Positions 1,761 to 63,363 of a DNA stretch of 64,000 nucleotides are shown piece after piece. Under the pieces are notes generated by a model. That model made no database searches. It was not told the DNA's origin and saw only the letters and a list, made by a program, of their open reading frames with translations. Position 1 is the stretch's first letter. Each line of letters opens with the position of its first letter. A program made the position numbers and the translations under genes. The stretch lies in IMG/VR virus record IMGVR_UViG_3300030419_008158, positions 1 through 64,000 of that record; one strand, written 5' to 3'.

Positions 1761-1768
1761 TAAATATC
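1761..1768 (-). promoter_or_regulatory. Putative phage late promoter GATATTTA
   Basis: Same 8-mer recurs upstream of five other structural-type genes. Confidence 0.55.
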
Positions 1769-1810
1769 ACGTAAGAGAAGAATGACACACTTTGTATACT
1801 TGAAAAAAGA

Positions 1811-2056
1811 CTAGTCTATATGATCAACAGAAAGAGCTGTCTCGAGAACATCGATCACTTGATCGTACTCGTTTGCTTCGTGCGTCTTAAGCTTCGCCTT
1901 GTTTTTTGCAGCAGAAAGCGCAGCTCTAAAAACTTTTGGCTCTACTCTATCTTTGAATTCAGCAAGAACTTGCTTCTTATCGTCTTGAAGCATCTTAATT
2001 TCATTCTCAATACTCATATAGCGCTCAAAGAGCTCTTTTACATCATTGTTGGTCAT
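1811..2056 (-). CDS. GapR/DUF2312 (T4 DsbA-like) dsDNA-binding protein
   Basis: VKELFERYMSIENEIKMLQDDKKQVLAEFK..PKVFRAAL matches the family pattern. Confidence 0.6.
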   Translation of the reverse strand: MTNNDVKELFERYMSIENEIKMLQDDKKQVLAEFKDRVEPKVFRAALSAAKNKAKLKTHEANEYDQVIDVLETALSVDHID

Positions 2057-2234
2057 TTTCACTTCTCCTATTTTCATAGCCAATAATCAAAAAAACACCA
2101 CTTAGAAAGTTGAGAGCAACCCACCCATAACTCTCTAATGTAATATTATGAAGCAGCACGATTGTGTTCAGGACAATCATGATTACTAAAAATATGTCAA
2201 AAAAATTATTTCGGCCGCTCACAATTCTTCTCAT
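2043..2234 (-). CDS. Small membrane protein
   Basis: Two hydrophobic segments in 63 aa. Confidence 0.45.
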   Translation of the reverse strand: MRRIVSGRNNFFDIFLVIMIVLNTIVLLHNITLESYGWVALNFLSGVFLIIGYENRRSENDQQ

Positions 2235-3025: not shown

Positions 3026-3718
3026 TTAGTCTTCGATTCCGAAGCGCATTTTCACAATAAGTTTCTCTCTCTCAGTAAGCGAGGACAAAACTTCATTAAT
3101 TTTTGCTGAAAGTCTTTCTCGATCAATTCTTTCATCAGGGCTCGGCTCTCTGGCCGGAATAACATCGGCAAGAGTTCGATTTCCACCCTCAGAAGGAAAC
3201 ATTGGCTTATCGAGCGCAATAGTTCTAGATGCAGACTGTCGCAAAGATCGAAGTGTATCCGGTGTGGTACCGAATTTTTCTGCAGTCTCCAAATCTGTAG
3301 GTTTTCGACCCATTTGTGACTCAAATGCATTTTCAAACTCAGAAATTTTATAAAGCTTTGAAAATGCATTTGACGGTAAATCAATCGTACCGGAGTTAGC
3401 GGCGATGTAAGCTCTTACAGCTGCTTGTATCCACCAATACGCGTAAGTTGAAAACTTAAAGCCCTTTGACCAATCAAACTCATCTACTGCTCGAGTGAGA
3501 CCCAGAACAGATTCTTGAAAAAGATCATCAATATCTACACCGCGATTGGTGTATTTCTTGACAACACTTAGCGCAAGACGTAAGTTTGCCTGTATCATCT
3601 TTTCTCTTGCAGCATTGTCGCCTTTTTCAATACGCTTGGAAAGTTCGATCTCTTCCTCACGAGTCAACAACTTTGTGTCGCCTACGTGATCAAATAGTGA
3701 ATAAGATGTTGAGTTCAT
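3026..3718 (-). CDS. Sigma-70 family factor (RpoD/RpoS-like regions 1.2-4.1, no 4.2 HTH)
   Basis: LLTREEEIEL; ANLRLALSVVKKY; DLFQE; GFKFSTYAYWWIQ; ends LTEREKLIVKMRFGIED*. Confidence 0.92.
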   Translation of the reverse strand: MNSTSYSLFDHVGDTKLLTREEEIELSKRIEKGDNAAREKMIQANLRLALSVVKKYTNRGVDIDDLFQESVLGLTRAVDEFDWSKGFKFSTYAYWWIQAAVRAYIAANSGTIDLPSNAFSKLYKISEFENAFESQMGRKPTDLETAEKFGTTPDTLRSLRQSASRTIALDKPMFPSEGGNRTLADVIPAREPSPDERIDRERLSAKINEVLSSLTEREKLIVKMRFGIED

Positions 3719-3966: not shown

Positions 3967-5580
3967 TTAGACACTGTCGAAATAAGCAACATTGGAATCG
4001 ACACCGTTGTCGTATTCCTCTGTTATTATACACCCAATAGACAACAAATTACACGCAACTGATAAACTATGTTCGACAGCAGAAACTACGACTGCGTGTG
4101 GATCGAGTATTCCTAAGTCAAACATGTCTCCATACTTATCGTTCTTGCCGTCATATCCGTATGTGTCGGCAGTTCTATTTACTTTTTGAACGACAAGATC
4201 TGCAGATACGTTACAGTTAGCGGCAATTTGTCGGAGCGGGGACTCCAATGCATCTAAAAATGCAACAGCACCTACATCAAAAGAGTCTCTTGCCTTGTAG
4301 CGCTTTCTAACTCTCTTTTTAGCCCTAGTCAATGCCACACCGCCTCCTGGCTGGACACCTTCTTTGAGGGCAGCTCGGCATGCATGAATCGCATCGTCGA
4401 CTCTATCACGCCTTTCTATCATCTCAGCTTCAGTTGCGCCGCCCACTTGAAGCACTGCGATACCATCGCTAAGCCTTTTTAGTCTTCGATCTGCTATTTT
4501 TTTATCATCTAAGCTGGCTGCTGGGTCGTTCATGACTGCCTTTGCCGAACTTTGTTTTTCCTTGACTTGCTCTGTGTGTTGCGTTCCAAAAAGAAGTGTT
4601 GTCTTATTTGTTACAGTCGCTTTTTTAACTCTTCCTAAAACTTCTTCTAGCTCATCTTTTTTTATAGGATGTTTTGCATCAGTAACAATTTTTGCGCCGA
4701 CTAATGCTGCAATATCTTGCAGTGCTGTAACTCTTGCAGAAGCAAACTCGGGTGACTTTATCACACAAACCTTTAGGCCCCCCTTTACTCTGTTCAAAAC
4801 CAAGGCCTGTAATGCTTCTCCTCCCACAGCATTGCAAATTATAAGAAGGCTTCCTCCAGATGCTGCTGTCTTTTCCAGCACCGGAATAATTGTCGAAACA
4901 GATGTAAGCTCGTCACTGATTATCAAAATGTCAGGGGACTCTAGTTCGGAAACTTGCTTTGATGTGTCGGTTACAAAATAAGGTGACTCAAAACCCCTGT
5001 CAATATAGGTGCCCTCAACCATGGTAAGTGTCGTATCATAGCCTTTTGCATCCTGAACTGAAACTGCTCCGTCGGCGCCGACTTTCTCAATCGCACTGCT
5101 TATTATTTCACCCAATTCCTTGTCGCCATTGGCCGAAATAACTGCTACATCACGAAGAGTATCAGGCGTGATGTCAACTTTTGTATTGTTGAGCTCTTCA
5201 ACAACTCTAGCAGCAGCTTCACGCATTCCTGACAGGACTTCGACAACTGAGTGGCCTGCAGAAATTACTTTTTCACCGTTGGCGACAATTTCCTGGGCGA
5301 GAACAGTTGAAGTTGTTGTTCCATCTCCTGCAACAGATGCACTTCTTTGTGCTGCTTCTCTTACAAGAGCAGCGCCTGCATTCTCATATGAATCTTTGAG
5401 CAAAATTGAATTTGCAACAGTTACACCATCTTTAGTAAGATGCGGAACATTGCCAGGTCTGCAAATGGCAACTGTTTTTCCCATGGGGCCTAATGTTATT
5501 CTTACTGCATCCGACAGTTTTTTAACACCAACTAAAAGCTTTTCTCTTGCTTCGGAGTCAAATAAAATTTCAGAATTCAT
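3967..5580 (-). CDS. groEL: GroEL-like chaperonin
   Basis: TLGPMG, TKDGVTVA, GDGTTT, VGGATEAEM, PGGG motifs. Confidence 0.95.
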   Translation of the reverse strand: MNSEILFDSEAREKLLVGVKKLSDAVRITLGPMGKTVAICRPGNVPHLTKDGVTVANSILLKDSYENAGAALVREAAQRSASVAGDGTTTSTVLAQEIVANGEKVISAGHSVVEVLSGMREAAARVVEELNNTKVDITPDTLRDVAVISANGDKELGEIISSAIEKVGADGAVSVQDAKGYDTTLTMVEGTYIDRGFESPYFVTDTSKQVSELESPDILIISDELTSVSTIIPVLEKTAASGGSLLIICNAVGGEALQALVLNRVKGGLKVCVIKSPEFASARVTALQDIAALVGAKIVTDAKHPIKKDELEEVLGRVKKATVTNKTTLLFGTQHTEQVKEKQSSAKAVMNDPAASLDDKKIADRRLKRLSDGIAVLQVGGATEAEMIERRDRVDDAIHACRAALKEGVQPGGGVALTRAKKRVRKRYKARDSFDVGAVAFLDALESPLRQIAANCNVSADLVVQKVNRTADTYGYDGKNDKYGDMFDLGILDPHAVVVSAVEHSLSVACNLLSIGCIITEEYDNGVDSNVAYFDSV

Positions 5581-10537: not shown

Positions 10538-10951
10538 CTAAATATCCTCATATAACAAACTAACAACCCATTCTCCATCCTTTTTATCTCCGTGTGTCTC
10601 GGTTATCAAATAGGAAGTATCGTATATGGTAAAAGTTAAATCTTTTCCATGCAAATGAAATTGAGAAAGTTGTTCTGGTGGGACTGCTATCAATAGTGTA
10701 TTCGGGCTCCACCCTACGACATCATATTTTTTAGCAATCTTTTCTTTTTTCGAGTACACAGATATTTCTAGATCGTACCCAGTTCCGATTTCTTCTAAAG
10801 AAGTAATTTCATCGAAAGAATTGTTGTTTGATTCCTCAGAAAGCAAGCTCTCATCAAGTCTCGATCTAAGCTCATCACTTAAGAAAAGTCGTTCTTCATT
10901 CAGATTGTCTGGTGTCTTTGTAGATTTCATCAACTTTTTGTGCCCACTCAA
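10538..10951 (-). CDS. Hypothetical protein
   Basis: In-operon ORF; start uncertain; LNE/LDE/LSE motifs. Confidence 0.55.
   Translation of the reverse strand: MSGHKKLMKSTKTPDNLNEERLFLSDELRSRLDESLLSEESNNNSFDEITSLEEIGTGYDLEISVYSKKEKIAKKYDVVGWSPNTLLIAVPPEQLSQFHLHGKDLTFTIYDTSYLITETHGDKKDGEWVVSLLYEDI
10539..10546 (-). promoter_or_regulatory. Putative phage late promoter GATATTTA
   Basis: Recurrent 8-mer 5 nt before an SD-less ATG. Confidence 0.55.
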
Positions 10952-12382: not shown

Positions 12383-12390
12383 TAAATATC
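12383..12390 (-). promoter_or_regulatory. Putative phage late promoter GATATTTA
   Basis: Recurrent 8-mer. Confidence 0.55.
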
Positions 12391-13269: not shown

Positions 13270-13632
13270 TTACTCTCCAAATGGGTTGTCGTCGCCGATA
13301 GCGTCGTAAATATTTTCAGTGTATTTTTCCTCAAGAGCATGAATCAAATTTGCTTTTTTTGCTTCGCAGTATTCGTCAATTATTTTAACTAAAGCAGGAT
13401 GACCCTCAGCAAACTGGCAAGCCAAGTGTTCAAAGACTTCCTGCATCGACAAGTCTCGTGAAACAGTTGCCTGCTTAAAGTCTATGTGTGTCTTAGAAAA
13501 AAGAGAAATATGAACCGATTTTTTTCGGTTTGCGCCGAGGAGAGCCTTTACTCTAGCCTCCGCCCTCACTTCTTGCTCCGACCGCGACTGGCGGGCCCGG
13601 GGGTTCTTCTTTTGTTTCTTTTGCGATGCCAT
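13270..13632 (-). CDS. Putative ribbon-helix-helix DNA-binding protein
   Basis: KKSVHISLFSKTHIDFK...LSMQEVFE; basic N-terminus. Confidence 0.45.
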   Translation of the reverse strand: MASQKKQKKNPRARQSRSEQEVRAEARVKALLGANRKKSVHISLFSKTHIDFKQATVSRDLSMQEVFEHLACQFAEGHPALVKIIDEYCEAKKANLIHALEEKYTENIYDAIGDDNPFGE

Positions 13633-16585: not shown

Positions 16586-16593
16586 TAAATATC
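16586..16593 (-). promoter_or_regulatory. Putative phage late promoter GATATTTA
   Basis: Intergenic, at the boundary between nucleotide cluster and virion block. Confidence 0.6.
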
Positions 16594-17952: not shown

Positions 17953-18504
17953 TTATCTCAAAAACCCTGTGTGATCATGACATCTTGGTTCATACTTCTC
18001 AGAGCCTCCGACATCAATTTGACTCAATCCTTCCACTTTTGGAACAGTGTAGAAAGCATCTTTGCCGCATATGGGACAAACAGCAGGGCATACTTCTATT
18101 CTGGTAGCCCATGGAAACATTTTTTGAACTTCTGCAAACGTTTCTCCCCTAGCAGATAACTGAATTGTGGAAACAAAAACTGTCTTGCCTTTTGAGAACA
18201 AATCTATTAGCACATCAGACACACCGTCTATCATAAAAGCTTCATCAACTGCAATAATATCACAATCACGTGATGTGTCTAGTATATCGCTCCCAGAAGA
18301 GACACACTTTGCATCCCACTTATATCCTGCATGTGTGACAATGGAGTCAACTAAATATCTATGGTCCATTTTGGGCTTGTAAGCTGCTATCTTTTTAGAC
18401 TGGTATTTTGCTCTGTCGAGTGCTGCTAACATTCTACTGGTTTTTCCGCCAAACATCGGGCCCGTAAACAAGACAAACTCAGGATCAGTCTTGACGCTAC
18501 TCAT
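17953..18504 (-). CDS. tdk: Thymidine kinase
   Basis: GPMFGGKT, AVDEAF, CPICG, YEPRC. Confidence 0.92.
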   Translation of the reverse strand: MSSVKTDPEFVLFTGPMFGGKTSRMLAALDRAKYQSKKIAAYKPKMDHRYLVDSIVTHAGYKWDAKCVSSGSDILDTSRDCDIIAVDEAFMIDGVSDVLIDLFSKGKTVFVSTIQLSARGETFAEVQKMFPWATRIEVCPAVCPICGKDAFYTVPKVEGLSQIDVGGSEKYEPRCHDHTGFLR

Positions 18505-24081: not shown

Positions 24082-24115
24082 AAAAATGCCCGCTTTTATT
24101 ATATCAAAGCGGGCA
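24082..24115 (-). terminator. Intrinsic terminator hairpin overlapping the dnaE promoter
   Basis: TGCCCGCTTT-GATATAATA-AAAGCGGGCA-TTTTT. Confidence 0.7.
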
Positions 24116-24126
24116 CAATCTTTACA
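24098..24126 (-). promoter_or_regulatory. Sigma-70-type promoter for dnaE
   Basis: TGTAAA-17 nt-TATAAT with extended TG. Confidence 0.65.
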
Positions 24127-24143
24127 CGTATTGAGTGACAGAA

Positions 24144-34962: not shown

Positions 34963-35374
34963 TTAGTTCCTCGAGCCACGTGTGATATTTATTAAGCGCA
35001 TGATCTTGAGGTTCTACTAACCTCCAGTCACCTATGCAAAATATTTTCCATGCATCGTTTCCATACTTTCCAATGCCGTGCAGTTCAATGGGTTCTTTCC
35101 AGTCATTGCCAACATATTCTTTAGTAAATCTACGCATGGTTCTAGGCCGCTTATTGTAGAATCCAAGCGGTCGTAAAAGATCAGACACTTCAGAAAATTT
35201 TGATCCCAAGAACACATCAGGAGTGGGCCACTTGTCAAAAAACTGCCATATTACTTTGTCAACTTGCTTTCTCGTAGTTTGATTTAGCATCAGACAAGAC
35301 ATTAAAATTTTCCACTCGTCAGGCCAAAGATCTTCCTGAATGAGTCCATGAGGAGACTTCGGGGGTTTCCACAT
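34949..35374 (-). CDS. MBD4-like HhH DNA glycosylase (stand-alone catalytic domain)
   Basis: WKPPKSPHGLIQE, LLRPLG, PIELHGIGKYGND, PQDHALNKYHTWL. Confidence 0.9.
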   Translation of the reverse strand: MWKPPKSPHGLIQEDLWPDEWKILMSCLMLNQTTRKQVDKVIWQFFDKWPTPDVFLGSKFSEVSDLLRPLGFYNKRPRTMRRFTKEYVGNDWKEPIELHGIGKYGNDAWKIFCIGDWRLVEPQDHALNKYHTWLEELNETH

Positions 35375-44542: not shown

Positions 44543-44857
44543 TTACTTCGATTTTTTAAGTGGTCGAGCCCCACCGAAAGAATCACCTGCTGCTTGAGCC
44601 GGAGATTTTCTCTTGCTAACTTTCTTAGATTTGTTTGGATACTCAGGACCGGCCCCTAAAGGAGTAGTCACCCCTCGAATTGCCCCGGTGCTTTGCAAAG
44701 AAGCTCCACCCGTACTAATTGCACTCACTTCTTCTTGCTCCTCTTCTTCTTCATCAGGAAGGTCAGGTTCAGTCAAAAGATCATCAGGTTCAGGGGTGTC
44801 AGCCGCTTCGTTCAGCATCCAATTAACATATTTCCAAAGTTGTTTTTGCATGTTCAT
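44543..44857 (-). CDS. Acidic/basic small hypothetical protein
   Basis: LNE motif; GATACTTA upstream. Confidence 0.6.
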   Translation of the reverse strand: MNMQKQLWKYVNWMLNEAADTPEPDDLLTEPDLPDEEEEEQEEVSAISTGGASLQSTGAIRGVTTPLGAGPEYPNKSKKVSKRKSPAQAAGDSFGGARPLKKSK

Positions 44858-44864
44858 AAGTATC
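44857..44864 (-). promoter_or_regulatory. Putative late promoter variant GATACTTA
   Basis: One mismatch to GATATTTA; 5 nt before ATG 44851. Confidence 0.45.
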
Positions 44865-46057: not shown

Positions 46058-47176
46058 TTAATTATTCATCTTTTCACTTTTTGTCGGAAACCAAACACTG
46101 TCGTAGTAAATTGATTCACAGTCGCTAAAAAAATCTTTTTCATTCGCTGGAGGAACTTCTACGATCAAAGCATCGTGTATAACTAAAAGAGGCTTTACAG
46201 CTGGATTTTTCTTGCAAAGACGTGAAAAAAGCAAATTCGCCAAATCTGCAGCAGTTGATTGAATAAAGTGATTGACTCTAACTCTTGGTTGCTTCGTAGC
46301 TTCGTAAAGAGGACGGCCGAACATGTTGGTAATTGTTCCAGCAGCTGCCTGATTTTCGAGCATTTTTTCAAGATTCGAAACTTCAAAAAAATTTGATACG
46401 CGCTCTATGAGCCCTTTAGCTTGTGTTCGATTACCAACTGTAGCTGCAAGCCTATTGACGCTAGCGCCATACAAAGCAGATAAAGTTGCCTGTTTTGCAA
46501 CTTCTCTTTTGTCAATGTCACACATCTTCATAACAGTACTATATATGTCTTCACCAAATTCGTTTGCAGAAGACACCCAGAGGGCTACTCTGGGTTCCAA
46601 AGAAGTGAAATCGATAGAATATATGGACGAGCCCTTTTGAGTAGCACAGAGAGCATTTCTGGATTCTCTAGGAAGCACTAAAAAGTTGGGCCCACGTGTA
46701 ACTGTTAGACGACCAGTTGATGATCCTGCTGTCGAATAAGATATTTTGGAATTTGGATCTTTACAAACAGCAGAAACTGCTCTTGCATTAGAGGGACAGG
46801 ACTTAGAAAACTTGGCAGGATCTATCTTTACATGTCCTAAATTATGTAAGAACTGTCTAATTTCTTTCCACACATAAAAATAGTCAAAAAACTTTTTGTC
46901 CAGAAGTGTCAACTCATCTATTTTTTGTCTGACAGTTTCTTCTCTGTCTGTTGAACTTAATAGCAGCGGCCATAGACTTTCATCAACACCCAAAGCGTCA
47001 CACATAGAAAGTACAGCATCCGAAACAGAAGAAACATTTTCTCCTTTGCATATTGTCAAAAATTCGCAGAGATCTTTCCACGATATTTGGGCTTTTGAAA
47101 AGTCTGCTGTGGACGTATCAATGTCAATCTCTTTCAATCTAACATTCTTCTCGAGTACACGCTCATAGATTATCAT
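46058..47176 (-). CDS. Minimal family A DNA polymerase domain
   Basis: TGRL, motif A DFTSLEPR, motif B REVAKQATLSALYG, NHFIQSTAAD, motif C IHDA. Confidence 0.85.
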   Translation of the reverse strand: MIIYERVLEKNVRLKEIDIDTSTADFSKAQISWKDLCEFLTICKGENVSSVSDAVLSMCDALGVDESLWPLLLSSTDREETVRQKIDELTLLDKKFFDYFYVWKEIRQFLHNLGHVKIDPAKFSKSCPSNARAVSAVCKDPNSKISYSTAGSSTGRLTVTRGPNFLVLPRESRNALCATQKGSSIYSIDFTSLEPRVALWVSSANEFGEDIYSTVMKMCDIDKREVAKQATLSALYGASVNRLAATVGNRTQAKGLIERVSNFFEVSNLEKMLENQAAAGTITNMFGRPLYEATKQPRVRVNHFIQSTAADLANLLFSRLCKKNPAVKPLLVIHDALIVEVPPANEKDFFSDCESIYYDSVWFPTKSEKMNN

Positions 47177-50659: not shown

Positions 50660-50675
50660 TAATCATTCTCCTATG

Positions 50676-56600: not shown

Positions 56601-57584
56601 TTGATCTTGTTCGAAAAAAGTGCCTAATTTCTGCCCATTTTGTGAATAAGTTCCGGGAGTCGATGCAACATCAGGAACACCTAGGCCGGTCTCCTTTAGA
56701 GTTTCGGGCAAAACCTCAGGTGTCTCGGGATCATCGTCGTGATCGACAGTGGAGGCAAACACATTTCCAGTTCCGTTGGAAACTGGAGATATAGAATCAC
56801 CCACTTTGTGAGCATCAACTATTGTCCCTTCTGAAGCTGTGGGTTTGTATGTGTTTGTCGACCAACTATTATCCAACCCAGATGCTTTTGATATAATATT
56901 AGAGAGATGACCTGTAGCAGGTCCTCCGGGGTGACCTCCCTTGTAAAGCTCATCTGCAAGAGCGTCTGACGGCACTGTGGATTTGGGATTGAGCTCCTCA
57001 TACTGCCCGGGAGAAGCAGGACCAGAACCGTCCGGACTATAATCATTTCGATCAGAAAGTTGGGTAGAAGTTGCTGCTTTAAGTTTATCTTTTTTGCTCG
57101 AAAGATCACTTCCAAGTTTTCCCGAATCGGATCCTGTCTTATCGATAAGGTCAGATAACTTTTGACCATCAGCATCAGATGTAAAGAAATTAGGTGTTAC
57201 GCCGACCGCTGTATTTGTCTCCTGATACGTTCCCCCAGTAAAAGACAACTCCGGAGCTTCTTTGTAAATATTTCCATCGGCGCCTCCCGTAGGGACAGGC
57301 AAAGCATTACCCACAACTGAAGAGACTGGTGTAAAGTTGGCTGGATTTGGATAAAAATCGTTTCCAGTATTGCCTCCGCGGCGGCCTGTCTGCATCATAT
57401 CATCAGCAAAGTCAGACATCTGATTTTTTACAACAGGGCTTACATCATTGCGCCCGTCAGGCGCAGGCTCGGTAATGTCTACACCTTCGAAAGTCGGTGT
57501 GGCTTTGTTCGCTCCGTCCCACAGTGCGCCAGGATTTGCAAGCCCTAGCGAAAGCGATTTCTCTTCAAGAGTTTTCTCAGCCAT
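50676..57584 (-). CDS. Giant baseplate/tail-tube-initiator-like protein with N-terminal repeats
   Basis: C-terminal FHDLRT...YGRQDP...RTINLTF...LYPQY...PVIRIRLGD...GVIT; ~190-aa repeats (DKTGG) in N-terminal half. Confidence 0.65.
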   Translation of the reverse strand: MAEKTLEEKSLSLGLANPGALWDGANKATPTFEGVDITEPAPDGRNDVSPVVKNQMSDFADDMMQTGRRGGNTGNDFYPNPANFTPVSSVVGNALPVPTGGADGNIYKEAPELSFTGGTYQETNTAVGVTPNFFTSDADGQKLSDLIDKTGSDSGKLGSDLSSKKDKLKAATSTQLSDRNDYSPDGSGPASPGQYEELNPKSTVPSDALADELYKGGHPGGPATGHLSNIISKASGLDNSWSTNTYKPTASEGTIVDAHKVGDSISPVSNGTGNVFASTVDHDDDPETPEVLPETLKETGLGVPDVASTPGTYSQNGQKLGTFFEQDQIDEVLDKTGGVSNKKGSDLFAPIKVGKAATSVQTQLGVGNIYKPDVGNTIGEYESVLSVDAVGNTIKSTAEDIGIPGEQNVRGAHSNVVDKRTPEELAKEAYDRSSGAPGLGTNTNYPVNHGDAPNFTDPNTHVQAGELDNFFKKVSDFTFTGGAYRDGESTPGVGNSFYTVDQIADLQITAAPNDLMSKAEKVGEAEGLLTEYTQTQLADNNPYDPSEAASPYSSKNTGADKDSTDQLYVKDQSTLGKFEAEASTDPVTNTSNAATVQKLLNDASSDGPTDDYLGDNREATHSNTYHPDPADTYFDSNKVGDSIAPTASGLGKVFASSVDADNDELTAETAPEGLQSSGLGVPKSTGTPGANPPGSDSGQILGTFFTQAQLNLVLDKTGGSPALKGHDIFSQTRVIEHNLHTALQLTDSSNPNTPGGEEHVPSATVAGDFIWPKSVVSSNTNDVNYPGRQPTPGVFEESPGRSPVHNAYLQQTQIAGKPTTGYLGHHPYHPQELQDGAALDPDVKKAQLEKSADTKIISGEGDAFFAADTSNIEESGLGLPSIDSAPGSDFDNGQTLGTFFTQDQVTEFIDKTGGTPEKLGSKLPESAESISEQVQVQLGQSNKFTPASKHTTNLDFVPHDVSKTSFGLEQEVTLPPGDLGGLGVYDDQGGHSFSADSISTLQLGDEGSAKLSLNTHRPEIESSMNDAPTLPKSAGPSFTDKSDLSFAQDTEMVPSPGVGPNFFTDGDYEIDKVMSSEDDAVIKVPMAKPLTSDSFDPSAFAEKVQLGLDNSQNPYVPGDAYLTGDAVGSVATFDFPAATDENAAGPEKLAAVFTAQQDLGKFEKSKAKFLDDGDEWIEAYTEIYSFAGAKSNEYGPSLSIETGPLVETPLERRSEIPITPGDEDRFFVNDQGRSIDGSVGTGLAGAAALINKDKLRTHNSDSEEDGRLGSSLVELGNPKNLPAGVPAPGKGVPTSYLDTYKEDDDPTGVMQAVLDMLKNENLYSPSEKSPFIRDSMSKDEGTATQGLFTLQRVLGKFLTAPDPSIASGGDISGTRVTADDMSHMANAALVRATGDYGGSLGLLEDLSSAGAVLANPLEQMGLAGVDLAALRFKSMATGDGASGPMAAKLRGATGNDTFMSLQLGDDSSTSTRLAVRGSGLDDSPYNGVSHSQLNNYLEPFGNGLLLDSVGMLYIGVLSIAAMMIAGLVIQEIASNVQNEKKYPKDGRNPAEMRYGRYQMLPRDEESGGGFEAPGPLQTFIDEMYAMFRIPNTDNDFGDCVGSGMLLMIGFPGNFVRDDVEASMATGVGLIDFAFNLFKSPAYYANFMRQIIMSGQRVVSAFAVLGGAPTGVGALESFFPAVDELVNSQLYQFIMISAMVGDANIKSLFGPPGVSIDDGLYDLKGLNVPLIPRAQDLSGDSKAVSNMVSVARMRQNVSRFGGNAKNPLSLSTFPASSVADSRLTGLSPIRKLEATKDNVRKMEMALDAEYMPFYFHDLRTYEIISMPAFVTSFDEQYAVNYNSINSYGRQDPVRIHSNTDRTINLTFKLIAFGPEDYTSLWYTVNKLVTMLYPQYSKGVQRTLKGDKEVSFIQPFSQVPAASPVIRIRLGDVLKSNYSTTALRSLFGYTEEAGTFKYDGMDSKKALGGLKAYKEELNKEINRLRNLALDASVGYPDAKTFGKFYDEVKAGKYRFDANGPVTVNLDGAYQEDLDTANKYGNFSGTDYVESGAVTLKSDSYLVYDSGEDREGGLFGKLGDAFGNTGKLSWKIKGTFKLYNARQSKAIKVKLKDITVLRFNNVHDRLLLRDGIQFEGDKKTAVQKAAEEKSGFDADTDTETWVTDAQKFFNENNNAIVRSFNSTRGKGLAGVITNMALDYSESTWEVDSKLGKAPKSVSITMGFAPIYDLPVGLDYMGRTRALSHPTGKLVSDRNDPHQTSFGGVYDEKELEVTANEEAYSEAIKVVEQASRRGAGPKEGPGIPGF

Positions 57585-57804
57585 TTCTTTCTCTTCTACT
57601 GACGACTTCTTTGGCAAACTCGGGATTTTTCATATTTTCTTTGAACATATCTAAAAAATTAAAATGATGCGAAAGGTCTGCCAAAAGCTTTTCTTTTACT
57701 GTAGGAGTCATATTTGTCATGAGTGCCTCAATGTACCCAGCAAGAGGATTTCCCTCTTCTTTCAACTGCTTTAACCGATTTTCGACGTTCTCTTTCTTAC
57801 TCAT
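57577..57804 (-). CDS. Small hypothetical protein
   Basis: AAGGAG SD before ATG 57804. Confidence 0.6.
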   Translation of the reverse strand: MSKKENVENRLKQLKEEGNPLAGYIEALMTNMTPTVKEKLLADLSHHFNFLDMFKENMKNPEFAKEVVSRRERNG

Positions 57805-57817
57805 ATTCTTCTCCTTA

Positions 57818-60800
57818 TTACGGTGCTTTTTCTTCCTTCTTGATTCCAGCCTCAGCGCCGACTTCCATGTACTTCGCATCCTTACCAGCTGTGAGAGGAA
57901 CTTTGCCGATTGCATTTCCGAGCTTGCCAGCGTCGATGGTGACGTAGACCTTCATGTTAATTCCGTCCATGTAATGTTTAATGTTCACAGTTCCGCCATT
58001 TTTGGCGGCGGATATTGATTCGACGACAGCCGTTCCCTTTCCAGATAGTCTTCGACCTGCCGATGCTATTTGGTTAATAGCTTTCGCGTAATCTGATGCT
58101 GTTGATTTGAACTTTTTAATGTCTGCTTGAGAAACTTTTGCTTCTCTTATTGTCGATTTAGCTGTCTTGAAGAATTTTTTGACCTTTTCCATATTTTTTA
58201 TTGCGCCGTCGAGCTTTTTACCCGTAGCTTCGGTATCTATTTTCTTTTCATTGAATATCGCGACCATTTTTGTCAAGAGAGTACTACCACCATCAGCAAA
58301 AGACTTAATTTGGGACAGCTTCTTTTTGCCTATAATAGTAAGCTTCATGCCATTGATATCTTTTATCTCTGACTGTAAAAGTGAAAGATGTGTAGTTATT
58401 TTTCCAACTGCATGTGTTATGTTCGACAGATTGTCCATTGCCTTGTCGATCCAGGCGATTGCTTCCGACATCTTCATGGGAGGCAGCTTCTGTGCCTCAT
58501 CTTGCGTGGGAACTGTGGTGTTCATCTCAGCTGCAGCAGCAGCTTCTGCTTCAGTTGTGAGAGGCATAACGCCCTTTGCTAGTGCAGCCGGAATTTTGGC
58601 TATCTTTGACGTCATGTCGTAGAGGTCACACATCAAACATGCCAGATCAAGCCTTCGAAAAAATTTCAGATTCTTATCAATAACTGATTTTAGTTTTCTA
58701 ACACTGGAGGCAATGTTCTCCAGCGCGTTGGCCGCCGGTGTAATCACATTGTTTACGGCTTGAACACCTTTTAGACCGGCGCCCTCATCTAGTTTTTTAG
58801 TGGCAAATTCGCCAATTTCGGATGCGTCTATGGCTTTGCCGATTGCTTCCCCAATGCCCAGTGCTTTTTTGAAGAGCTCTGTTGCTTGCTTTTCTACAAT
58901 TGCAGGTTTCATTCTGCTAAGAGCCTTCTGGGCGCGCTTTAGCTGATTCGGAATGTCGGAAAGCTGTTCAATTCTAAGGACTGTCTGTCTCTGCTGCTCC
59001 AGCTTTGTAAGTTTTGCCTTTTGAGCCTGCTCCGGCGTAACTTTATCCTGCTCACCCAGCAGTTCTTTGTATTCTTTGATTCGGCCCTGCACCCACAAAT
59101 TCTTCAGCCTACCCTTTACTGACGGGGGAATGTCAGATTCCAATGAAATCATCCACATTCCAAGGGCGGAGTCCATGTCCTCGACGCCATAGAGGCGCTT
59201 TGTTTCCTTTTCAACAGCTTTTTTTGCATTTGTAGTCACTTCTGTGGTGATTCTGTTTCTTTCAGTTTCGATGCTCTTTGTGAGTGTGCCGGCAAATTCT
59301 TTGTACTTTGCGAGCTGATATTGTACTCTTTTCCGCATCTTGACATTTGTTTTTAGGTTGAAGCGTTGGCCTCTGCGCAGTCCTAACGCATCTTTCCCCG
59401 TCCCAACGTATTCTCCCGTCGATAGCGCATCGGTTAGGTGCTTAATGACGTCCTTCGATTTCTTCAGCATCTCGCCGGCTTTGCCCTCCCACCGAGCCCC
59501 ACCGCGCCCTTCGGCGACGAAGGTTGCTTCTTCCGCATTTTGCACAACTTGATCGATAATATGCTGTTGCGATTTGACTTTTGCCTTCACTTTTTTCGCG
59601 ATCTCCGATTCGAAAAGCTTCGAGAACTTCATGAAATCGGGATCGCCGGGCGTTTGAATTCCCGCATATTTCAACCAGAAATCAACATCTCGCTGTGTTG
59701 TACCGTAGGCTTTTATCTCTTCTGGGGTGGGAGCTGACGCAGCAAACCGAATCATTTCGTACATCTTTTGCGGCAAACCAGCAAGTGTATAGCTTTTTAT
59801 TGTATCTTCCAGTCGCTTCTCCATGGCACTTACGTTAACACCAGTCTTTTTGCCGGTGATAATAGCCTCTGCCAGCTGCTCTACAGTCCAACCGTCCTTC
59901 AACGCTTGATTGTGTGCATCTTTAGCGTTGTGCTCCATTTCTTTCTTGAGAGACTCTACACCATTTTCGCTTAAAATAGCGTCAGCAATAATTTTATAGA
60001 TCTTGTGGAACTTTTTGCCCGGGCCCATCTCCTCAACCACGGCCTCGGGTATGGTGATGATGTCCCCGATGAACTGGACACCTGCTCTCTGAAGTGTTCT
60101 AATTTGGGTTAGTCCCAAATAATCTTTAATCTTTTTGGCGCCAAAACCGGCGACCTGGTCGGTGTCCCACTCACCAAGTTCTCTATCTATATCCTCTTTT
60201 AGCTTAAAAAGGAAGCCTGATGCTTCTGTGGCGAGCTTGATGCGATCGTCCTGATTCTTTTTGAGCGATCTGACAGTGGAATCAGCCACATCAGCGCTAG
60301 CTGACATCATCCCAAAGATTTTTTTCTGTTGTTCTGTCATATTGTCGCCGAGGATGGCAGATACTTGTGCGATACCAGTCGCCAATTCATTTGACTCTGC
60401 AATCAACCCTCTATACACGTTGTTGTGATTACGAGCTAGGCCAGCAAAGTGTTTATACATCCGATTTTGATACTTTTCAATGCTCCCGTGAGTGTCTCTT
60501 GCCAGTTTCTCAACAACCTTGTTTGTGCTAAAGAATGCATCCTGAACTTCGTCTGTTGACCACGCGCCGAACGTCAAAGAGCTCACAACACCCGACAAGA
60601 AACGCTGACCGCCCTCTCCTTTTTTGGCATTATAGGCTTCATAGAGGCCGTAGCCAATATCAAACAAAAACGGTATGCCTTTGGAAAGGGCACCCTTGAG
60701 AATTTTGCTCCCAACTGACAGAGTTCTGGTGACCATTCCTGTGGCTGTTCTAGTTGCTTGGCCCGTCACTGATTTCGTCAGCTTTTTTGCTGATTCTGTC

Positions 60801-63349
60801 GCGACTTTTTGTGCTGTCTGATTTATTTGCTTGTCTACTTTTTTATAGACATCCTGATACACCCTGTTTGCAGCTTTTTGCATCTGCTTGGTTGTCATGG
60901 TCCCATCTTTGACCATTCTCTGCATCGCCATCGTGCGCGCGCTCTTAGCAGCTTCGACTGCTGTTTTTCCGGCATATGGGTTTTTAGGGCCCATAATTCT
61001 ACTCATTGTTCCGGCCCAGGCCATCTGCGCGCCTCGATAGAGGGTGGGTGTTCCCTTAGTAAAAGCCCATGCCGTTGCCTTGAAAGCGCCCTTTGCAATG
61101 TGCTTGCCTAAAAATAACATTGATCTAGGCGCCAGCAGTGTCAGTCCCAGGGCACCCCATCCTAGCTTCTCCCAAAAGCTCGTGTCGTTCCAGACTTTTG
61201 TAATCCCCTCCCATATACCACAACCTATAACTACACCTAAGTTGTATGCGTCTTCACCCAACATTCCAAAAAGCTTCTTTGTGGGATCAGACATTGCTTC
61301 AATCATTTGCATGAAAGAACCATCAGGTCCAAAAACACTTGTTATTGGTTCAAGAATGCTTAGAAATCTTTTGCCTGCTCCGGAAGCATCAATATTTTTA
61401 AAGAGAGCTTTAAAGAGAGCTCCAACATTTGTTTTAGCTTCGCCAGTTTTGAGGTATCCTTCAGCTTCGAGAATCAGACTATTCATAAAAGGAGCAACTT
61501 TGTCTTTGATCGTATCAAAGACGTACTCAAGAACGCCTCCTATGAATTTTGCAACTGCTGTCGCGAAATCACCAAAACCTTTAACAATCTTACCAACACC
61601 AGTTCCCCCGAGACCGAATTGATCATCTAGGCTACCTGTAATGGTGTTCATTAACTGCTTGAATGTCATTTCGCCCTTGAAGAATGCCTCAAAAATAGGC
61701 TTTACAGCTCTTTCAAATTGCCGAAATTTTTGGGGCTCAAAAAATTCTGCTATTCCGTCAAGCATCGTCTTGATGCCTGGGAAGAATTTCACGAACATTC
61801 GGCCAACTTTTTCTCCAAATCTGAACATCATCTGGAGACCTCGTCGAATCGATCGAAGAACCTTTCTAAACTCCTGTGAGCGCATAATTCCTCGCTCAAA
61901 CCCCTTTACAAACGCATCAAAGAAACCTTTGACCTTGGGCATGTCCAGAACTTCAATCAACCGCTTGATTCCCTTTTGAAGCTCCTTGAGAACTTCTTTT
62001 TGGGACATTTGCTTCTTTTCAGCATCTTCAGCTTCAGCAGCTATTTGTGAGTAGCTAATTCCTTGTTTATCCAGCGCAAAGGCAGCATCGAGACTTTTTG
62101 CCGGCATTCTTGTAATCTGAGCCAAGTACATTCTCTGCTGGTAGTTAAAGTCTTTCAAGTTGTGTCCAGCTCTAAAGAATGATTTTCTAATAATGTCTAT
62201 TTTTTCAGCCGGATTTTGGGCTGACATTAGCTCGACAGCATCAACATTCATTTGGAATTGCTGAGCCATCTGAGAGGCTGCCTCTACTGTGTCTGAGAAA
62301 CCCGCAAAAGACTGCATGATGTTTGCCATGTCTTTTATCTCGAGTCCCAATTTCCTTGCATAAGCTGTAATAGGCGCAAATGCTTTTGGTCCCAAATGAC
62401 CGAAGTTCTCAACGTCTTGCGTGAGCTCTTTCATTCCTTTGGCCATGTCCTTGACACCCATGCCAAATCGCTTAGCGGTTCTTACTGCAGTCTTGCTAAA
62501 GCGAGTTAGAAATTTCTCAGGATCTTCGCCACGGGCCTCAGCAATTCCCATAAGTTCAGAAAATTCTTCTTTAGAAACCCCCAAACCTCTCTGAAAAATG
62601 ATAGCCTTATCACCCATTGTCTCGAAATGTTTTTGCAGTCGATAAAAATTGTCTCCTGCAGCTGCTGCAAGCTCTGTGAGATCTTTAAGAAGAGCAGCAA
62701 TACCATCACGACCATACCCATAAACATTTCTAATTGTAAGTCCGGTACCGGCTAAACTTTTACCGCTATGTCTTATTTTGTTAAAGGTGTCACGAACGGA
62801 CTTTCCTGGTCCTGATGCTAAATCGCCCATAACATCTCTAAGCTCTTCCATCGCTTCAGCTATGGGACGTCCAGCAGAGCCCTCTTGAGACATTTCAACT
62901 AGACTGCCAAAAAGTTTAAAAGGAAACGTAAAGAGAGCAAATGCTGTTTTAGCCAAAGAAGCCGCGATGCTCAAAACCGCACTAGCAACATTTTTAATGA
63001 TGCTGATTCCACCACTAAAAATACTCCCCAAAGAGCCGAATACTTCTCCCAGTACACTAAATCCGCTGCTAGCTTCTTCTGCAGCATCAGCTGCTTCGTT
63101 GAGAGAATCTTCCAGCTCTTTGGCAGCATCGTTGCTGTCTTTTAGCGCATCTGAGCTGTTTCGAAGTGCACTCGTCATGCTGCGAACATTTCTTGTGGAT
63201 CTACTCGAGCCAAGACTAGACGCTAAATTAGATGCTAAGTTACTTTGCGTGGAAAGAGTCTTATTTTGCTCTGCTAATAGCTTGTTTCGTTCAACTAAAG
63301 CAGCATTGATATCTCTTTCAAGCTGTAGCTGTTGTGTTAGATCCGCCAT
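57818..63349 (-). CDS. Tail tape measure protein
   Basis: ~1843 aa, helical, A/G/K-rich with hydrophobic stretches; between chaperone pair and baseplate genes. Confidence 0.8.
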   Translation of the reverse strand: MADLTQQLQLERDINAALVERNKLLAEQNKTLSTQSNLASNLASSLGSSRSTRNVRSMTSALRNSSDALKDSNDAAKELEDSLNEAADAAEEASSGFSVLGEVFGSLGSIFSGGISIIKNVASAVLSIAASLAKTAFALFTFPFKLFGSLVEMSQEGSAGRPIAEAMEELRDVMGDLASGPGKSVRDTFNKIRHSGKSLAGTGLTIRNVYGYGRDGIAALLKDLTELAAAAGDNFYRLQKHFETMGDKAIIFQRGLGVSKEEFSELMGIAEARGEDPEKFLTRFSKTAVRTAKRFGMGVKDMAKGMKELTQDVENFGHLGPKAFAPITAYARKLGLEIKDMANIMQSFAGFSDTVEAASQMAQQFQMNVDAVELMSAQNPAEKIDIIRKSFFRAGHNLKDFNYQQRMYLAQITRMPAKSLDAAFALDKQGISYSQIAAEAEDAEKKQMSQKEVLKELQKGIKRLIEVLDMPKVKGFFDAFVKGFERGIMRSQEFRKVLRSIRRGLQMMFRFGEKVGRMFVKFFPGIKTMLDGIAEFFEPQKFRQFERAVKPIFEAFFKGEMTFKQLMNTITGSLDDQFGLGGTGVGKIVKGFGDFATAVAKFIGGVLEYVFDTIKDKVAPFMNSLILEAEGYLKTGEAKTNVGALFKALFKNIDASGAGKRFLSILEPITSVFGPDGSFMQMIEAMSDPTKKLFGMLGEDAYNLGVVIGCGIWEGITKVWNDTSFWEKLGWGALGLTLLAPRSMLFLGKHIAKGAFKATAWAFTKGTPTLYRGAQMAWAGTMSRIMGPKNPYAGKTAVEAAKSARTMAMQRMVKDGTMTTKQMQKAANRVYQDVYKKVDKQINQTAQKVATESAKKLTKSVTGQATRTATGMVTRTLSVGSKILKGALSKGIPFLFDIGYGLYEAYNAKKGEGGQRFLSGVVSSLTFGAWSTDEVQDAFFSTNKVVEKLARDTHGSIEKYQNRMYKHFAGLARNHNNVYRGLIAESNELATGIAQVSAILGDNMTEQQKKIFGMMSASADVADSTVRSLKKNQDDRIKLATEASGFLFKLKEDIDRELGEWDTDQVAGFGAKKIKDYLGLTQIRTLQRAGVQFIGDIITIPEAVVEEMGPGKKFHKIYKIIADAILSENGVESLKKEMEHNAKDAHNQALKDGWTVEQLAEAIITGKKTGVNVSAMEKRLEDTIKSYTLAGLPQKMYEMIRFAASAPTPEEIKAYGTTQRDVDFWLKYAGIQTPGDPDFMKFSKLFESEIAKKVKAKVKSQQHIIDQVVQNAEEATFVAEGRGGARWEGKAGEMLKKSKDVIKHLTDALSTGEYVGTGKDALGLRRGQRFNLKTNVKMRKRVQYQLAKYKEFAGTLTKSIETERNRITTEVTTNAKKAVEKETKRLYGVEDMDSALGMWMISLESDIPPSVKGRLKNLWVQGRIKEYKELLGEQDKVTPEQAQKAKLTKLEQQRQTVLRIEQLSDIPNQLKRAQKALSRMKPAIVEKQATELFKKALGIGEAIGKAIDASEIGEFATKKLDEGAGLKGVQAVNNVITPAANALENIASSVRKLKSVIDKNLKFFRRLDLACLMCDLYDMTSKIAKIPAALAKGVMPLTTEAEAAAAAEMNTTVPTQDEAQKLPPMKMSEAIAWIDKAMDNLSNITHAVGKITTHLSLLQSEIKDINGMKLTIIGKKKLSQIKSFADGGSTLLTKMVAIFNEKKIDTEATGKKLDGAIKNMEKVKKFFKTAKSTIREAKVSQADIKKFKSTASDYAKAINQIASAGRRLSGKGTAVVESISAAKNGGTVNIKHYMDGINMKVYVTIDAGKLGNAIGKVPLTAGKDAKYMEVGAEAGIKKEEKAP

Positions 63350-63355
63350 GTTCAC

Positions 63356-63363
63356 TAAATATC
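63356..63363 (-). promoter_or_regulatory. Putative phage late promoter GATATTTA
   Basis: 6 nt before SD-less ATG of the tape measure gene. Confidence 0.6.

What the first reader, a model, noticed from the sequence alone, without database searches (positions are those of the whole stretch)
1761..63363. Recurrent GATA(T/C)TTA motif: candidate late promoter often driving leaderless mRNAs
Seen on the minus strand at 1761-1768, 10539-10546, 12383-12390, 16586-16593, 44857-44864 (variant) and 63356-63363. It precedes virion-type or unknown genes and was not noticed before replication genes, which have sigma-70-like promoters. In four cases an SD-less ATG follows 5-6 nt later; the other two have SD-led starts ~22-24 nt away. 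Inference: a -10-only late promoter distinct from T4 TATAAATA, a natural target for the region-4.2-less sigma.
Basis: partly seen in the sequence, partly recalled or inferred. Interest (0 to 1): 0.6.

Follow-up and report, generated by a model that had tools for sequence, protein, structure and literature searches.

The report
Variant T4-type late promoter, partly leaderless

Summary
The window is the first 64 kb of a 284-kb phage with nearly all genes on the minus strand. Genome-wide, GATATTTA occurs 21 times on the coding strand and 2 on the other. Fifteen of the 21 lie within 50 nt upstream of a predicted start, making it the most enriched upstream 8-mer (p about 1.6e-15). The consensus is G-A-T-A-N-T-T-A, with no conserved -35 region. 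The same pipeline recovers TATAAATA as the top word in T4. The core ATATTTA is also the top upstream word in four relatives. It sits before orthologous portal genes while the flanks diverge. Annotated genes behind it are tail sheath, portal, baseplate, adaptor and the capsid operon, all outside the window. An ATG follows at a fixed 5 nt (24 cases in one relative, p about 4e-13), which fits leaderless mRNAs under T4 late-promoter geometry. Two relatives have the motif and a gp55-like sigma but no RpoD-like sigma. So the likely reader is the gp55-like sigma, whose model's best structural match is T4 gp55 (Z 10.3). No RNA data exist, so start sites remain inferred.

The parts
63356..63363 (-). 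GATATTTA, candidate late promoter. An ATG at 63349 follows after 6 nt with no SD (leaderless candidate). It opens a 1843-aa ORF of unknown family, followed by ORFs of 2302 aa and 1042 aa.
   Evidence: Orthologues in G001 and G003 carry CATATTTA upstream but with an SD-led leader. The N-terminus M-A-D is shared with the G001 orthologue. No Pfam or PHROG family was found. The Atlas gives only a weak lead to tape-measure-like clusters.
44857..44864 (-). GATACTTA variant. An ATG at 44851 follows after 5 nt with no SD (leaderless candidate). It opens a 102-aa ORF.
   Evidence: Orthologues keep the leaderless layout: G001 has GATATTTA-N5-ATG and G003 has GATAATTA-N6-ATG, at 28-38% protein identity.
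16586..16593 (-). GATATTTA, 24 nt before the SD-led ATG at 16561. It heads an operon with a 453-aa unknown protein and, further on, a SOD-like protein (14170-14859).
12383..12390 (-). GATATTTA. An ATG at 12377 follows after 5 nt (leaderless candidate) and opens a 373-aa ORF. The operon continues with a pterin-4a-carbinolamine dehydratase (10896-11249).
   Evidence: The G001 orthologue has a near-match followed by N5-ATG. The G003 orthologue has GATACTTA with an SD leader.
10539..10546 (-). GATATTTA. An ATG at 10533 follows after 5 nt and opens a short 56-aa ORF. The motif's TAG is the stop codon of the upstream gene. This is the least certain of the leaderless candidates.
1761..1768 (-). GATATTTA, 22 nt before the SD-led ATG at 1738 (197-aa unknown protein).
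   Evidence: The G001 orthologue has the near-match GATATGTA at the same distance.
46059..46066 (-). AATAATTA, a weaker variant 16 nt before the SD-led ATG at 46042. Possible extra site.
   Evidence: Variants at positions 1 and 5 are tolerated genome-wide.
13307..13314 (-). AATATTTA, a weaker variant 38 nt before the predicted start at 13268. Possible extra site.
18352..18359 (-). GATATTTA inside the thymidine kinase gene, 409 nt from the next start. Probably a chance copy or an internal site.
34984..34991 (+). GATATTTA on the non-coding strand. Probably chance.
   Evidence: Only 2 plus-strand copies exist in 284 kb.
3026..3718 (-). RpoD-like sigma (230 aa) with regions 1.2, 2, 3 and 4.1, ending where region 4.2 would begin. 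This is the rival reader of the motif and is judged unlikely.
   Evidence: it aligns to E. coli sigma70 residues 352-566 of 613. The same truncation is present in four relatives.
24098..24127 (-). The contrasting promoter class, GTGTAA-N15-TGATATAAT, 29 nt before the DnaE polymerase gene. Further copies lie at 7672-7700 and 35394-35422.

Best explanation
GATANTTA (core ATATTTA) is the late promoter of this phage, a diverged form of the T4 late promoter TATAAATA. It is an 8-bp, -10-type element with no -35 partner.

Inferred mechanism: a phage-encoded, gp55-like sigma (247 aa, genome 124278-125021, outside the window) binds host core RNA polymerase. It recognises the element at about -13 to -6, and transcription starts 6 nt after the last A.

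At most genes this gives a 10-35 nt leader that carries a Shine-Dalgarno sequence. Where an ATG lies exactly 5 nt (sometimes 6 nt) after the motif, the A of the ATG is at or next to +1. The mRNA is then leaderless and would be translated without a Shine-Dalgarno sequence.

Shown here: the motif is real, position-specific, conserved across a large phage clade and linked to virion genes. It co-occurs with the gp55-like sigma and not with the RpoD-like sigma.

Inferred: the start sites, the late timing and which sigma binds.
For: 1. Enrichment. GATATTTA is the top upstream 8-mer: 15 of 21 coding-strand copies lie within 50 nt of a start (p 1.6e-15). Strand bias is 21 to 2. Only position 5 tolerates change.
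2. Positive control. The same pipeline on 100 kb of T4 puts TATAAATA first (14 of 21, p 3e-17), with similar distances to the starts.
3. No information upstream of the motif in any of four genomes, so there is no -35 element.
4. Conservation.
- ATATTTA is the top upstream 7-mer in G001 (40/77, p 3e-40), G003 (18/45, p 2e-18) and phage immuto (39/106, p 3.5e-32).
- ATATTTAT is the top upstream 8-mer in Mel-JY01 (18/90, p 8e-12).
- 37 of 80 portal orthologues carry NATANTTA 9-33 nt upstream. The closest relatives keep it at 15-16 nt while the flanks diverge.
- Orthologues of window genes keep it.
5. Gene class. It precedes two tail-sheath genes, the portal, a baseplate wedge protein, a head-tail adaptor and the operon that holds the gp23-like capsid gene. 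Replication genes carry another promoter type.
6. Reader.
- The 247-aa protein hits PHROG 234 'late sigma transcription factor' (E 1.3e-5).
- Profile alignment to T4 gp55 gives E 0.006 over residues 19-122 against 9-116.
- In an exhaustive search of 48,161 chains, the best match of its AlphaFold model (pLDDT 78.8) is T4 gp55, chain 7d7d_F: Z 10.3, rmsd 2.8 A, 97 residues.
- Immuto and Mel-JY01 have this sigma and the motif but no RpoD-like sigma.
7. Geometry. In the T4 structure the adenines at -12, -9 and -8 are flipped into gp55 pockets, which places TATAAATA at -13 to -6 (PMC7892883). With the same placement, motif-N5-ATG puts the A of the ATG at +1.
8. Leaderless class. An ATG lies exactly 5 nt after ATANTTA 24 times in G001, against a mean of 3.4 at other offsets (p 3.5e-13), and 21 of these open ORFs of 50 aa or more. 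In this genome 5 such ORF-opening ATGs lie at offsets 5-6 (p 0.006). T4 shows no such spike.
Against: - No transcript data exist. No RNA run holds this sequence, so neither the start sites nor late timing are shown.
- Sequence-level support for gp55 membership is weak. PDB sequence searches with two profiles did not find gp55, hhalign probability was low, and Foldseek gave only weak hits, all to sigma factors in general.
- The protein is larger than gp55. Its C-terminal part resembles sigma region 4, which gp55 lacks.
- No gp45-type or DnaN-type clamp was detected in the genome. The T4 activation mechanism may therefore not apply.
- In the window itself the genes behind the motif are unknown or metabolic, not demonstrably virion genes.
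- The RpoD-like sigma appears, by eye and against my memory of E. coli sigma70 (not a tool result), to differ at residues that read -12 and the TG of an extended -10. An altered -10 specificity for that sigma cannot be excluded.
Confidence: 0.65

Rival explanations
1. The motif is a -10-only promoter read by the RpoD-like sigma that lacks region 4.2 (window 3026-3718). Without region 4.2 this sigma cannot use a -35 element.
For: - The sigma is real, and its truncation after region 4.1 is conserved in four relatives.
- The motif has no -35 partner.
- GATATT can be read as a -10 hexamer that keeps A at -11 and T at -7. The start-site geometry is compatible with this.
- By eye, the sigma differs from E. 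coli sigma70 at the residues that read -12. That comparison rests on memory and is not tool-verified.
Against: - Immuto and Mel-JY01 have ATATTTA as the top upstream word but no RpoD-like sigma, with no tblastn hit at E up to 1 and up to 10 respectively.
- Genomes that do have this sigma also have a second abundant promoter class, CGTGTAA-N12-TGnTATAAT: 15 copies here, more than 40 in G001 and a GTGCAA variant in G003. Mel-JY01 lacks that class.
- The missing region 4.2 is encoded as a separate, conserved 65-aa ORF. The sigma may therefore not be without region 4.2 in practice.
Confidence: 0.15
2. The motif acts at the RNA or regulator level. It could be a processing site, a translation signal for starts without a Shine-Dalgarno sequence, or the operator of a DNA-binding regulator, rather than a promoter.
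For: - Its place just upstream of starts, and the fixed 5-nt spacing, could also suit a translation or cleavage signal.
- No transcript data exist to exclude this.
Against: - At most sites it lies 15-38 nt upstream, beyond a normal Shine-Dalgarno sequence. That position does not suit a translation signal.
- Its statistics match those of the proven T4 late promoter under the same test.
- It shares the xATAxxTA frame and the 8-bp length with TATAAATA, in phages that carry a gp55-like sigma.
- It is not palindromic.
Confidence: 0.08
3. The motif is a promoter element for the host's own housekeeping sigma, for example a relative of the Bacteroidota -7 element TAnnTTTG (recalled from memory). The genes behind it would then simply be host-transcribed.
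For: - TATATTTA in the Flavobacterium phage resembles TAnnTTTG at 5 of its 6 specified positions.
- Canonical TTGACA-N17-TATAAT promoters are almost absent from this genome.
Against: - The same core is used by phages of Flavobacterium and Microcystis, and by this phage, whose genes carry strong Shine-Dalgarno sequences unlike immuto's. One host sigma cannot explain this.
- The final base is A. GATATTTG is never upstream of a start (0 of 8).
- Positions 3-4, which are free in the Bacteroidota element, are strict here, while position 5 is free.
Confidence: 0.05

Closest known systems
Bacteriophage T4 late promoter (TATAAATA) read by gp55, with gp33 and the gp45 sliding clamp
   Same: - An 8-bp AT-rich element of the -10 type with no conserved -35 region.
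- It shares the frame xATAxxTA.
- It precedes virion genes.
- It gives the same enrichment statistics and distances to the starts under the same test.
- The genome encodes a sigma whose best structural match is gp55.
- The portal, capsid and sheath proteins are T4-like.
   Different: - The consensus is GATANTTA: positions 5-6 are T/N-T instead of A-A, and position 1 is G.
- The sigma has 247 aa against 185 in gp55, and carries a C-terminal part that resembles sigma region 4.
- No gp45-type or DnaN-type clamp was found, and no gp33 homologue was identified.
- A class with an ATG exactly 5 nt downstream exists here and is absent from T4.
Promoters with a -10 element adjacent to the ORF that give leaderless mRNAs, as described in Deinococcus-Thermus (PMC12340547)
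   Same: A -10-type element ends a fixed few bases before the start codon (about 6-7 bp for a hexamer there, 5 nt for this 8-mer). There is no Shine-Dalgarno sequence and no -35 region, and the arrangement is conserved at orthologues.
   Different: There the element is the host TATAAT-like box read by the housekeeping sigma, and the start sites are shown by RNA data. Here it is a phage-specific box, probably read by a phage sigma, and the start sites are inferred.
Extended -10 promoters used by sigma70 lacking region 4.2 (established E. coli biochemistry, recalled from memory)
   Same: The idea that a sigma without region 4.2 must use promoters that do not depend on a -35 element.
   Different: - The motif has no TGn extension and is not TATAAT.
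- A separate class in this genome does match TGnTATAAT, but it also carries a conserved upstream box, CGTGTAA.
- The motif occurs in relatives that lack that sigma.

Membership tests
T4-type (gp55-dependent) late promoter | A single short AT-rich element at the -10 position, with no conserved -35 element | tested here: met
   Aligned sites in four genomes show no information content upstream of the 8-mer. The position relative to +1 is inferred, not measured.
T4-type (gp55-dependent) late promoter | Consensus TATAAATA | tested here: not met
   The consensus here is GATANTTA. Five of 8 positions are shared with TATAAATA.
T4-type (gp55-dependent) late promoter | Precedes late (virion and assembly) genes and not replication genes | tested here: met
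   It precedes sheath (two genes), portal, baseplate wedge, adaptor and the capsid operon. DnaE and the topoisomerase II operon use another promoter class, and no GATANTTA copy precedes RNR or DnaB. Within the window the downstream genes are of unknown function.
T4-type (gp55-dependent) late promoter | The phage encodes a gp55-family sigma | tested here: met
   PHROG 234 at E 1.3e-5. hhalign to T4 gp55 at E 0.006. VIA-align top hit 7d7d_F with Z 10.3. Sequence-only PDB searches missed gp55.
T4-type (gp55-dependent) late promoter | Activation through a phage sliding clamp (gp45) and a co-activator (gp33) | tested here: not met
   No match to PF09116 (gp45 C-terminal domain) or PF02768 (DnaN domain 3) in the genome. 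gp33 was not searched. The 95-aa ORF upstream of the sigma gene has no PHROG hit.
T4-type (gp55-dependent) late promoter | Transcripts start about 6 nt after the box, late in infection and dependent on replication | not testable with these tools
   No RNA run holds this sequence.
Promoter of the region-4.2-less RpoD-like sigma | The motif and the sigma occur together across related genomes | tested here: not met
   Mel-JY01 and immuto have the motif but not the sigma.
Leaderless-mRNA promoter (-10 element adjacent to the ORF) | The -10-type element ends a fixed 5-7 nt before the start codon, with no Shine-Dalgarno sequence | tested here: met
   There is a spike of ATG at exactly +5: 24 in G001 (p 3.5e-13) and 5 ORF-opening ATGs at +5/+6 here (p 0.006). 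The layout is conserved at the 102-aa gene in three genomes.
Leaderless-mRNA promoter (-10 element adjacent to the ORF) | The primary 5' end lies at the A of the AUG | not testable with these tools
   No RNA data.

The most novel reading that the evidence does not exclude
ATATTTA plus its gp55-like sigma form a self-contained late-expression module. A large clade of phages carries it across hosts of different phyla (Flavobacterium, Microcystis and the unknown marine host of this phage).

The sigma would be a new two-domain subfamily: a gp55-type region 2 joined to a region-4-like domain. It would work without the T4 clamp and gp33 machinery.

In the jumbo members, a fifth or more of the late promoters are placed exactly so as to produce leaderless mRNAs. 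Late translation would then be independent of Shine-Dalgarno pairing. Together with the split RpoD-like sigma and its CGTGTAA-TGnTATAAT promoters, this would make a phage-encoded two-sigma cascade.
Probability: 0.3. Interest if true: 0.7.

Novelty: new variant of a known kind. Interest (0 to 1): 0.55.

Why it matters
- It gives a testable late-promoter consensus for a large, mostly uncultured clade of T4-related marine and freshwater phages. The clade has more than 570 portal relatives in IMG/VR and 654 homologues of the sigma, every one either unnamed or called hypothetical by its source.
- It allows late genes and true start codons to be annotated in these genomes. This includes several starts without a Shine-Dalgarno sequence that gene callers would misplace.
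- It shows how the T4 late box and its sigma have drifted together.
- It suggests that systematic leaderless late mRNAs exist in a T4-type lineage, which is not a feature of T4 itself.
- Two cultured relatives (Flavobacterium phage immuto and Microcystis phage Mel-JY01) make this directly testable.

Tried and rejected
- Megablast of 10 kb of the window against cultured phages found nothing.
- The search for related loci with two window proteins behind the motif found no relative. The portal protein did.
- RNA evidence: no run on record as RNA holds the sequence, only marine DNA metagenomes. Read laying was therefore not used, because contigs cannot show starts.
- PDB sequence searches with two profiles of the gp55-like sigma gave no significant hit. 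Foldseek gave only weak hits to sigma factors in general. The exhaustive structural search settled it.
- I looked for terminators just upstream of the motif as a mark of new transcription units. The result was 2 of 25 sites against 5 of 311 control upstream regions, too few to use.
- Canonical TTGACA-N16-18-TATAAT promoters: 12 near-matches, with no sign that they form a promoter class.
The control genomes do not contain PF00940, so that negative is weak.
- Literature: no paper in the held library describes this motif, or promoters of Mel-JY01 or Immutovirus.
- Chance or composition artefact was rejected on the strand bias, the positional enrichment and the conservation.
- SPO1 late promoters (-10 GATATT, recalled from memory) were considered. 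CGTTAGA appeared among the G003 upstream words, but no -35 partner is seen with the motif, so I did not pursue this.

Full report
**Setting.** The window is the first 64 kb of a 284,429-bp virus record, about 40% G+C and estimated complete. A crude ORF caller gives 345 genes, 336 of them on the minus strand. The minus strand is therefore the coding strand almost everywhere. DNA runs that hold the sequence are marine metagenomes.

**The observation.** GATAYTTA occurs 8 times in the window. Two more were not listed:
- 18352-18359 (-) lies inside the thymidine kinase gene.
- 34984-34991 (+) is antisense to coding sequence.

In the window alone the excess is modest: 8 against 3.5 expected, and 2 of 100 shuffles reach 8. 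An ATG follows 5 nt after the motif at 10533, 12377 and 44851, and 6 nt after it at 63349, with no room for a Shine-Dalgarno sequence. At 1738 and 16561 the start is led by a Shine-Dalgarno sequence and lies 22 and 24 nt downstream.

**More than chance.**
- Genome-wide there are 21 copies of GATATTTA on the coding strand and 2 on the other. The reversed-word control gives 4 and 4.
- Among all 8-mers, GATATTTA is the most enriched within 50 nt upstream of predicted starts: 15 of 21 copies, binomial p 1.6e-15. It ranks ahead of the Shine-Dalgarno words.
- Single-base variants show that only position 5 tolerates change (T > C > A > G), and position 1 weakly. Changes at positions 3, 4, 6, 7 and 8 almost abolish the upstream association, and position 2 is less strict (GCTATTTA, 2 of 6 upstream). 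The element is G-A-T-A-N-T-T-A.
- Aligned sites carry no information upstream of the 8-mer, so there is no -35 element.
- As a positive control I ran the same pipeline on 100 kb of phage T4. It ranks the experimentally established late promoter TATAAATA first (14 of 21, p 3e-17), with distances of 14-29 nt to the starts. GATATTTA behaves the same way here.

**Conservation.** The portal protein has more than 570 relatives in IMG/VR.
- Upstream of the 80 best portal orthologues (61-84% identity), 37 carry NATANTTA 9-33 nt before the start.
- The closest four keep G/AATATTTA at 15-16 nt, as here (16 nt), while the surrounding intergenic sequence has diverged.
- Other subclades show related words in the same place, such as GATATTAT, CTAATTAG and TAGAATT.

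De novo upstream k-mer enrichment in whole relatives puts the same core first:

| Genome | Word | Upstream / total | p |
|---|---|---|---|
| G001 (318 kb) | GATATTTA | 25/36 | 1.5e-30 |
| G001 (318 kb) | ATATTTA | 40/77 | 3e-40 |
| G003 (255 kb) | ATATTTA | 18/45 | 1.7e-18 |
| Microcystis phage Mel-JY01 | ATATTTAT | 18/90 | 8e-12 |
| Flavobacterium phage immuto | ATATTTA | 39/106 | 3.5e-32 |

In Mel-JY01 an exact GATATTTA lies 35 nt before the portal gene. Orthologues of the window's own motif-led genes also keep the element.

**Gene class.** Outside the window the motif directly precedes:
- two tail-sheath genes;
- the gp20-like portal gene;
- a baseplate wedge protein;
- a head-tail adaptor;
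- the gene heading the operon that contains the gp23-like major capsid gene.

In the window, the DnaE polymerase, the topoisomerase II operon and the operon that holds GroEL and the sigma gene carry a different element, GTGTAA-N14/15-TGnTAnAAT. There are 15 copies of it genome-wide, all on the coding strand and clustered in a region of many small genes at 195-217 kb. The two classes do not mix. This supports a late-gene role.

The caveat is that the genes behind the six window sites have no recognisable family. Their operons include a superoxide-dismutase-like protein and a pterin-4a-carbinolamine dehydratase. The 1843-aa protein gave only a weak language-model lead to tape-measure-like clusters.

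**Which factor reads it.** The genome encodes two sigma-like proteins.

*The RpoD-like sigma.* This is the protein in the window (3026-3718, 230 aa).
- It has regions 1.2, 2, 3 and 4.1 and stops exactly where region 4.2 begins. It aligns to E. coli sigma70 residues 352-566 of 613.
- The truncation is conserved in four relatives.

*The gp55-like sigma.* This is a 247-aa protein at 124278-125021 (-), outside the window.
- It matches PHROG 234, 'late sigma transcription factor' (E 1.3e-5).
- It has 654 homologues in the large protein collection, each either unnamed or called hypothetical by its source, and none of those listed has a Pfam domain.
- A 36-sequence profile aligns to T4 gp55 over residues 19-122 against 9-116 (hhalign E 0.006, low probability).
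- An AlphaFold model (pLDDT 78.8) was searched against 48,161 PDB representatives. The best hit is T4 gp55 in the late transcription activation complex: 7d7d_F, Z 10.3, rmsd 2.8 A, 97 residues, in the same register. Region-2 domains of other sigmas follow at Z 8-9.
- Its C-terminal part (158-247) resembles sigma region 4 (Z 5-7), which gp55 lacks.

*The deciding evidence is co-occurrence.* Mel-JY01 and immuto have a homologue of the gp55-like sigma (tblastn E 8e-12 and 1.5e-18) and have the ATATTTA motif. They have no RpoD-like sigma and no region-4.2 fragment. Their hosts are a cyanobacterium and a flavobacterium. This phage uses strong Shine-Dalgarno sequences and immuto does not. No phage RNA polymerase was detected. 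By contrast, the RpoD-like sigma tracks the CGTGTAA-TGnTATAAT class: more than 40 copies in G001, a GTGCAA variant in G003, and none in Mel-JY01.

**Geometry and leaderless mRNAs.** In the cryo-EM structure of the gp55 open complex, the adenines at -12, -9 and -8 of the late promoter are flipped into pockets (PMC7892883). This places TATAAATA at -13 to -6. The review of T4 late transcription describes an 8-bp box about one helical turn upstream of the start, with no conserved -35 region (PMC2988020).

If GATATTTA sits at the same place, transcription starts 6 nt after its last A. A motif-N5-ATG arrangement then makes the A of the ATG the first base of the mRNA.

Independently of any gene call, ATG lies exactly 5 nt after ATANTTA 24 times in G001, against a mean of 3.4 at the other offsets from 0 to 15 (Poisson p 3.5e-13). 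Twenty-one of these open ORFs of at least 50 codons. In this genome five ORF-opening ATGs lie at offsets 5-6, against 0.6 per offset elsewhere (p 0.006). T4 has no such spike.

The 102-aa gene at 44543-44851 keeps the layout in three genomes (N5, N5 and N6) at 28-38% protein identity. The 1843-aa gene is leaderless here but carries a Shine-Dalgarno leader in G001 and G003, with the same M-A-D start in G001. This supports 63349 as the true start.

A -10 element set 6-7 bp before the ORF is an experimentally supported signature of leaderless mRNAs in Deinococcus-Thermus (PMC12340547).

In the weak gp55 alignment, the residue that stacks on A-12 (Y97) is an invariant tyrosine here (Y103), and A at that position of the motif is strict. 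The pocket residues for -9 and -8 (H95 and T99) are replaced by an invariant F101 and N105. These are the motif positions that differ from T4. This is suggestive only.

**What is shown and what is inferred.**
- Shown: the element, its strictness, its position, its conservation, its link to virion genes, the absence of a -35 partner, the fixed-spacing class, and the co-occurrence pattern of the two sigmas.
- Inferred: that it is a promoter, that it fires late, that the gp55-like sigma binds it, that +1 lies 6 nt downstream, and that the N5 genes are translated as leaderless mRNAs.
- Points against a simple copy of the T4 mechanism: no gp45-type or DnaN-type clamp was found, and the sigma has an extra region-4-like domain.

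**Comparison and novelty.** This works like the T4 late promoter and is best filed as a new variant of it. It passes the tests for architecture, gene class and the presence of a gp55-family sigma. It fails the consensus test (5 of 8 positions shared) and the clamp test.

I found no description of the motif, or of promoters in these phages, in the held literature. That library is incomplete.

The leaderless subclass is the less expected part. Phage transcripts have been called 'often leaderless' (PMC5312081), but I know of no such class at T4 late promoters, and the T4 control shows none.

**Verdict.** It is probably wrong about which sigma reads the motif.

Noticed in passing
window 3026-3718 (-) together with genome 164087-164284 (+), outside the window (L003:1426-1623:+): The RpoD-like sigma looks like a split gene. 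The window protein ends at RpoD_Cterm model position 193 of 238. A 65-aa ORF 160 kb away, on the opposite strand, matches positions 193-229, which is the region 4.2 helix-turn-helix. The small ORF is conserved in G001 (70% identity) and G003 (49%), each time on the strand opposite to the bulk of the genes. A TTGACA box lies upstream of it and there is no Shine-Dalgarno sequence.
   Followed up: partly
window 7672-7700, 24098-24127 and 35394-35422 (-), plus 12 more at genome 195-280 kb: A second promoter class has an unusual -35-like box: (C)GTGTAA, then 14-15 nt, then TGnTAnAAT. All copies lie on the coding strand, before replication genes and small early-type genes. It has more than 40 near-identical copies in G001 (CGTGTAAaA-N12-TGGTATAAT) and a GTGCAA variant in G003. 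It is absent from Mel-JY01, which lacks the RpoD-like sigma. What reads the CGTGTAA box is unknown.
   Followed up: partly
genome 124278-125021 (-), outside the window (L002:1111-1854:-): The gp55-like sigma belongs to a family of 654 proteins. Each is either unnamed or called hypothetical by its source, and none of those listed has a Pfam domain. Its model joins a gp55-like region 2 to a region-4-like C-terminal domain.
   Followed up: partly
window 10538-10546, and genome sites such as 268762 and 278339: The 3' end of the motif (TTAG or TTAA) often doubles as the stop codon of the upstream gene. Promoter and stop codon overlap in very short intergenic gaps.
   Followed up: no
window 47229-63349 (-): Three consecutive giant ORFs (1843, 2302 and 1042 aa) match no Pfam or PHROG family. 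They lie behind the leaderless candidate at 63356. The Atlas gives only a weak tape-measure-like lead for the first.
   Followed up: partly
window 10896-11249 and 14170-14859 (-): Auxiliary-metabolism-type genes, a pterin-4a-carbinolamine dehydratase and a superoxide-dismutase-like protein (Fe/Mn SOD C-terminal domain), sit in operons headed by the late-type motif.
   Followed up: no
window 3967-5580, 20442-24068, 43644-44435 and 46058-47176 (-): The phage combines T4-like virion genes with a bacterial-type replication set. This includes a DnaE-type Pol III alpha, a DnaB-like helicase, a family-A polymerase domain protein, a gp32-like protein and a GroEL-like chaperonin. No clamp gene was detected.
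   Followed up: no
genome 68673-71822 and 262399-265743 (-), outside the window: Two large tail-sheath paralogues (1049 and 1114 aa) lie about 190 kb apart. Each is preceded by the motif.
   Followed up: no
genome about 256.46-256.48 kb, outside the window: A run of 10 N (an assembly gap) lies just downstream of a GATATTTA copy.
   Followed up: no
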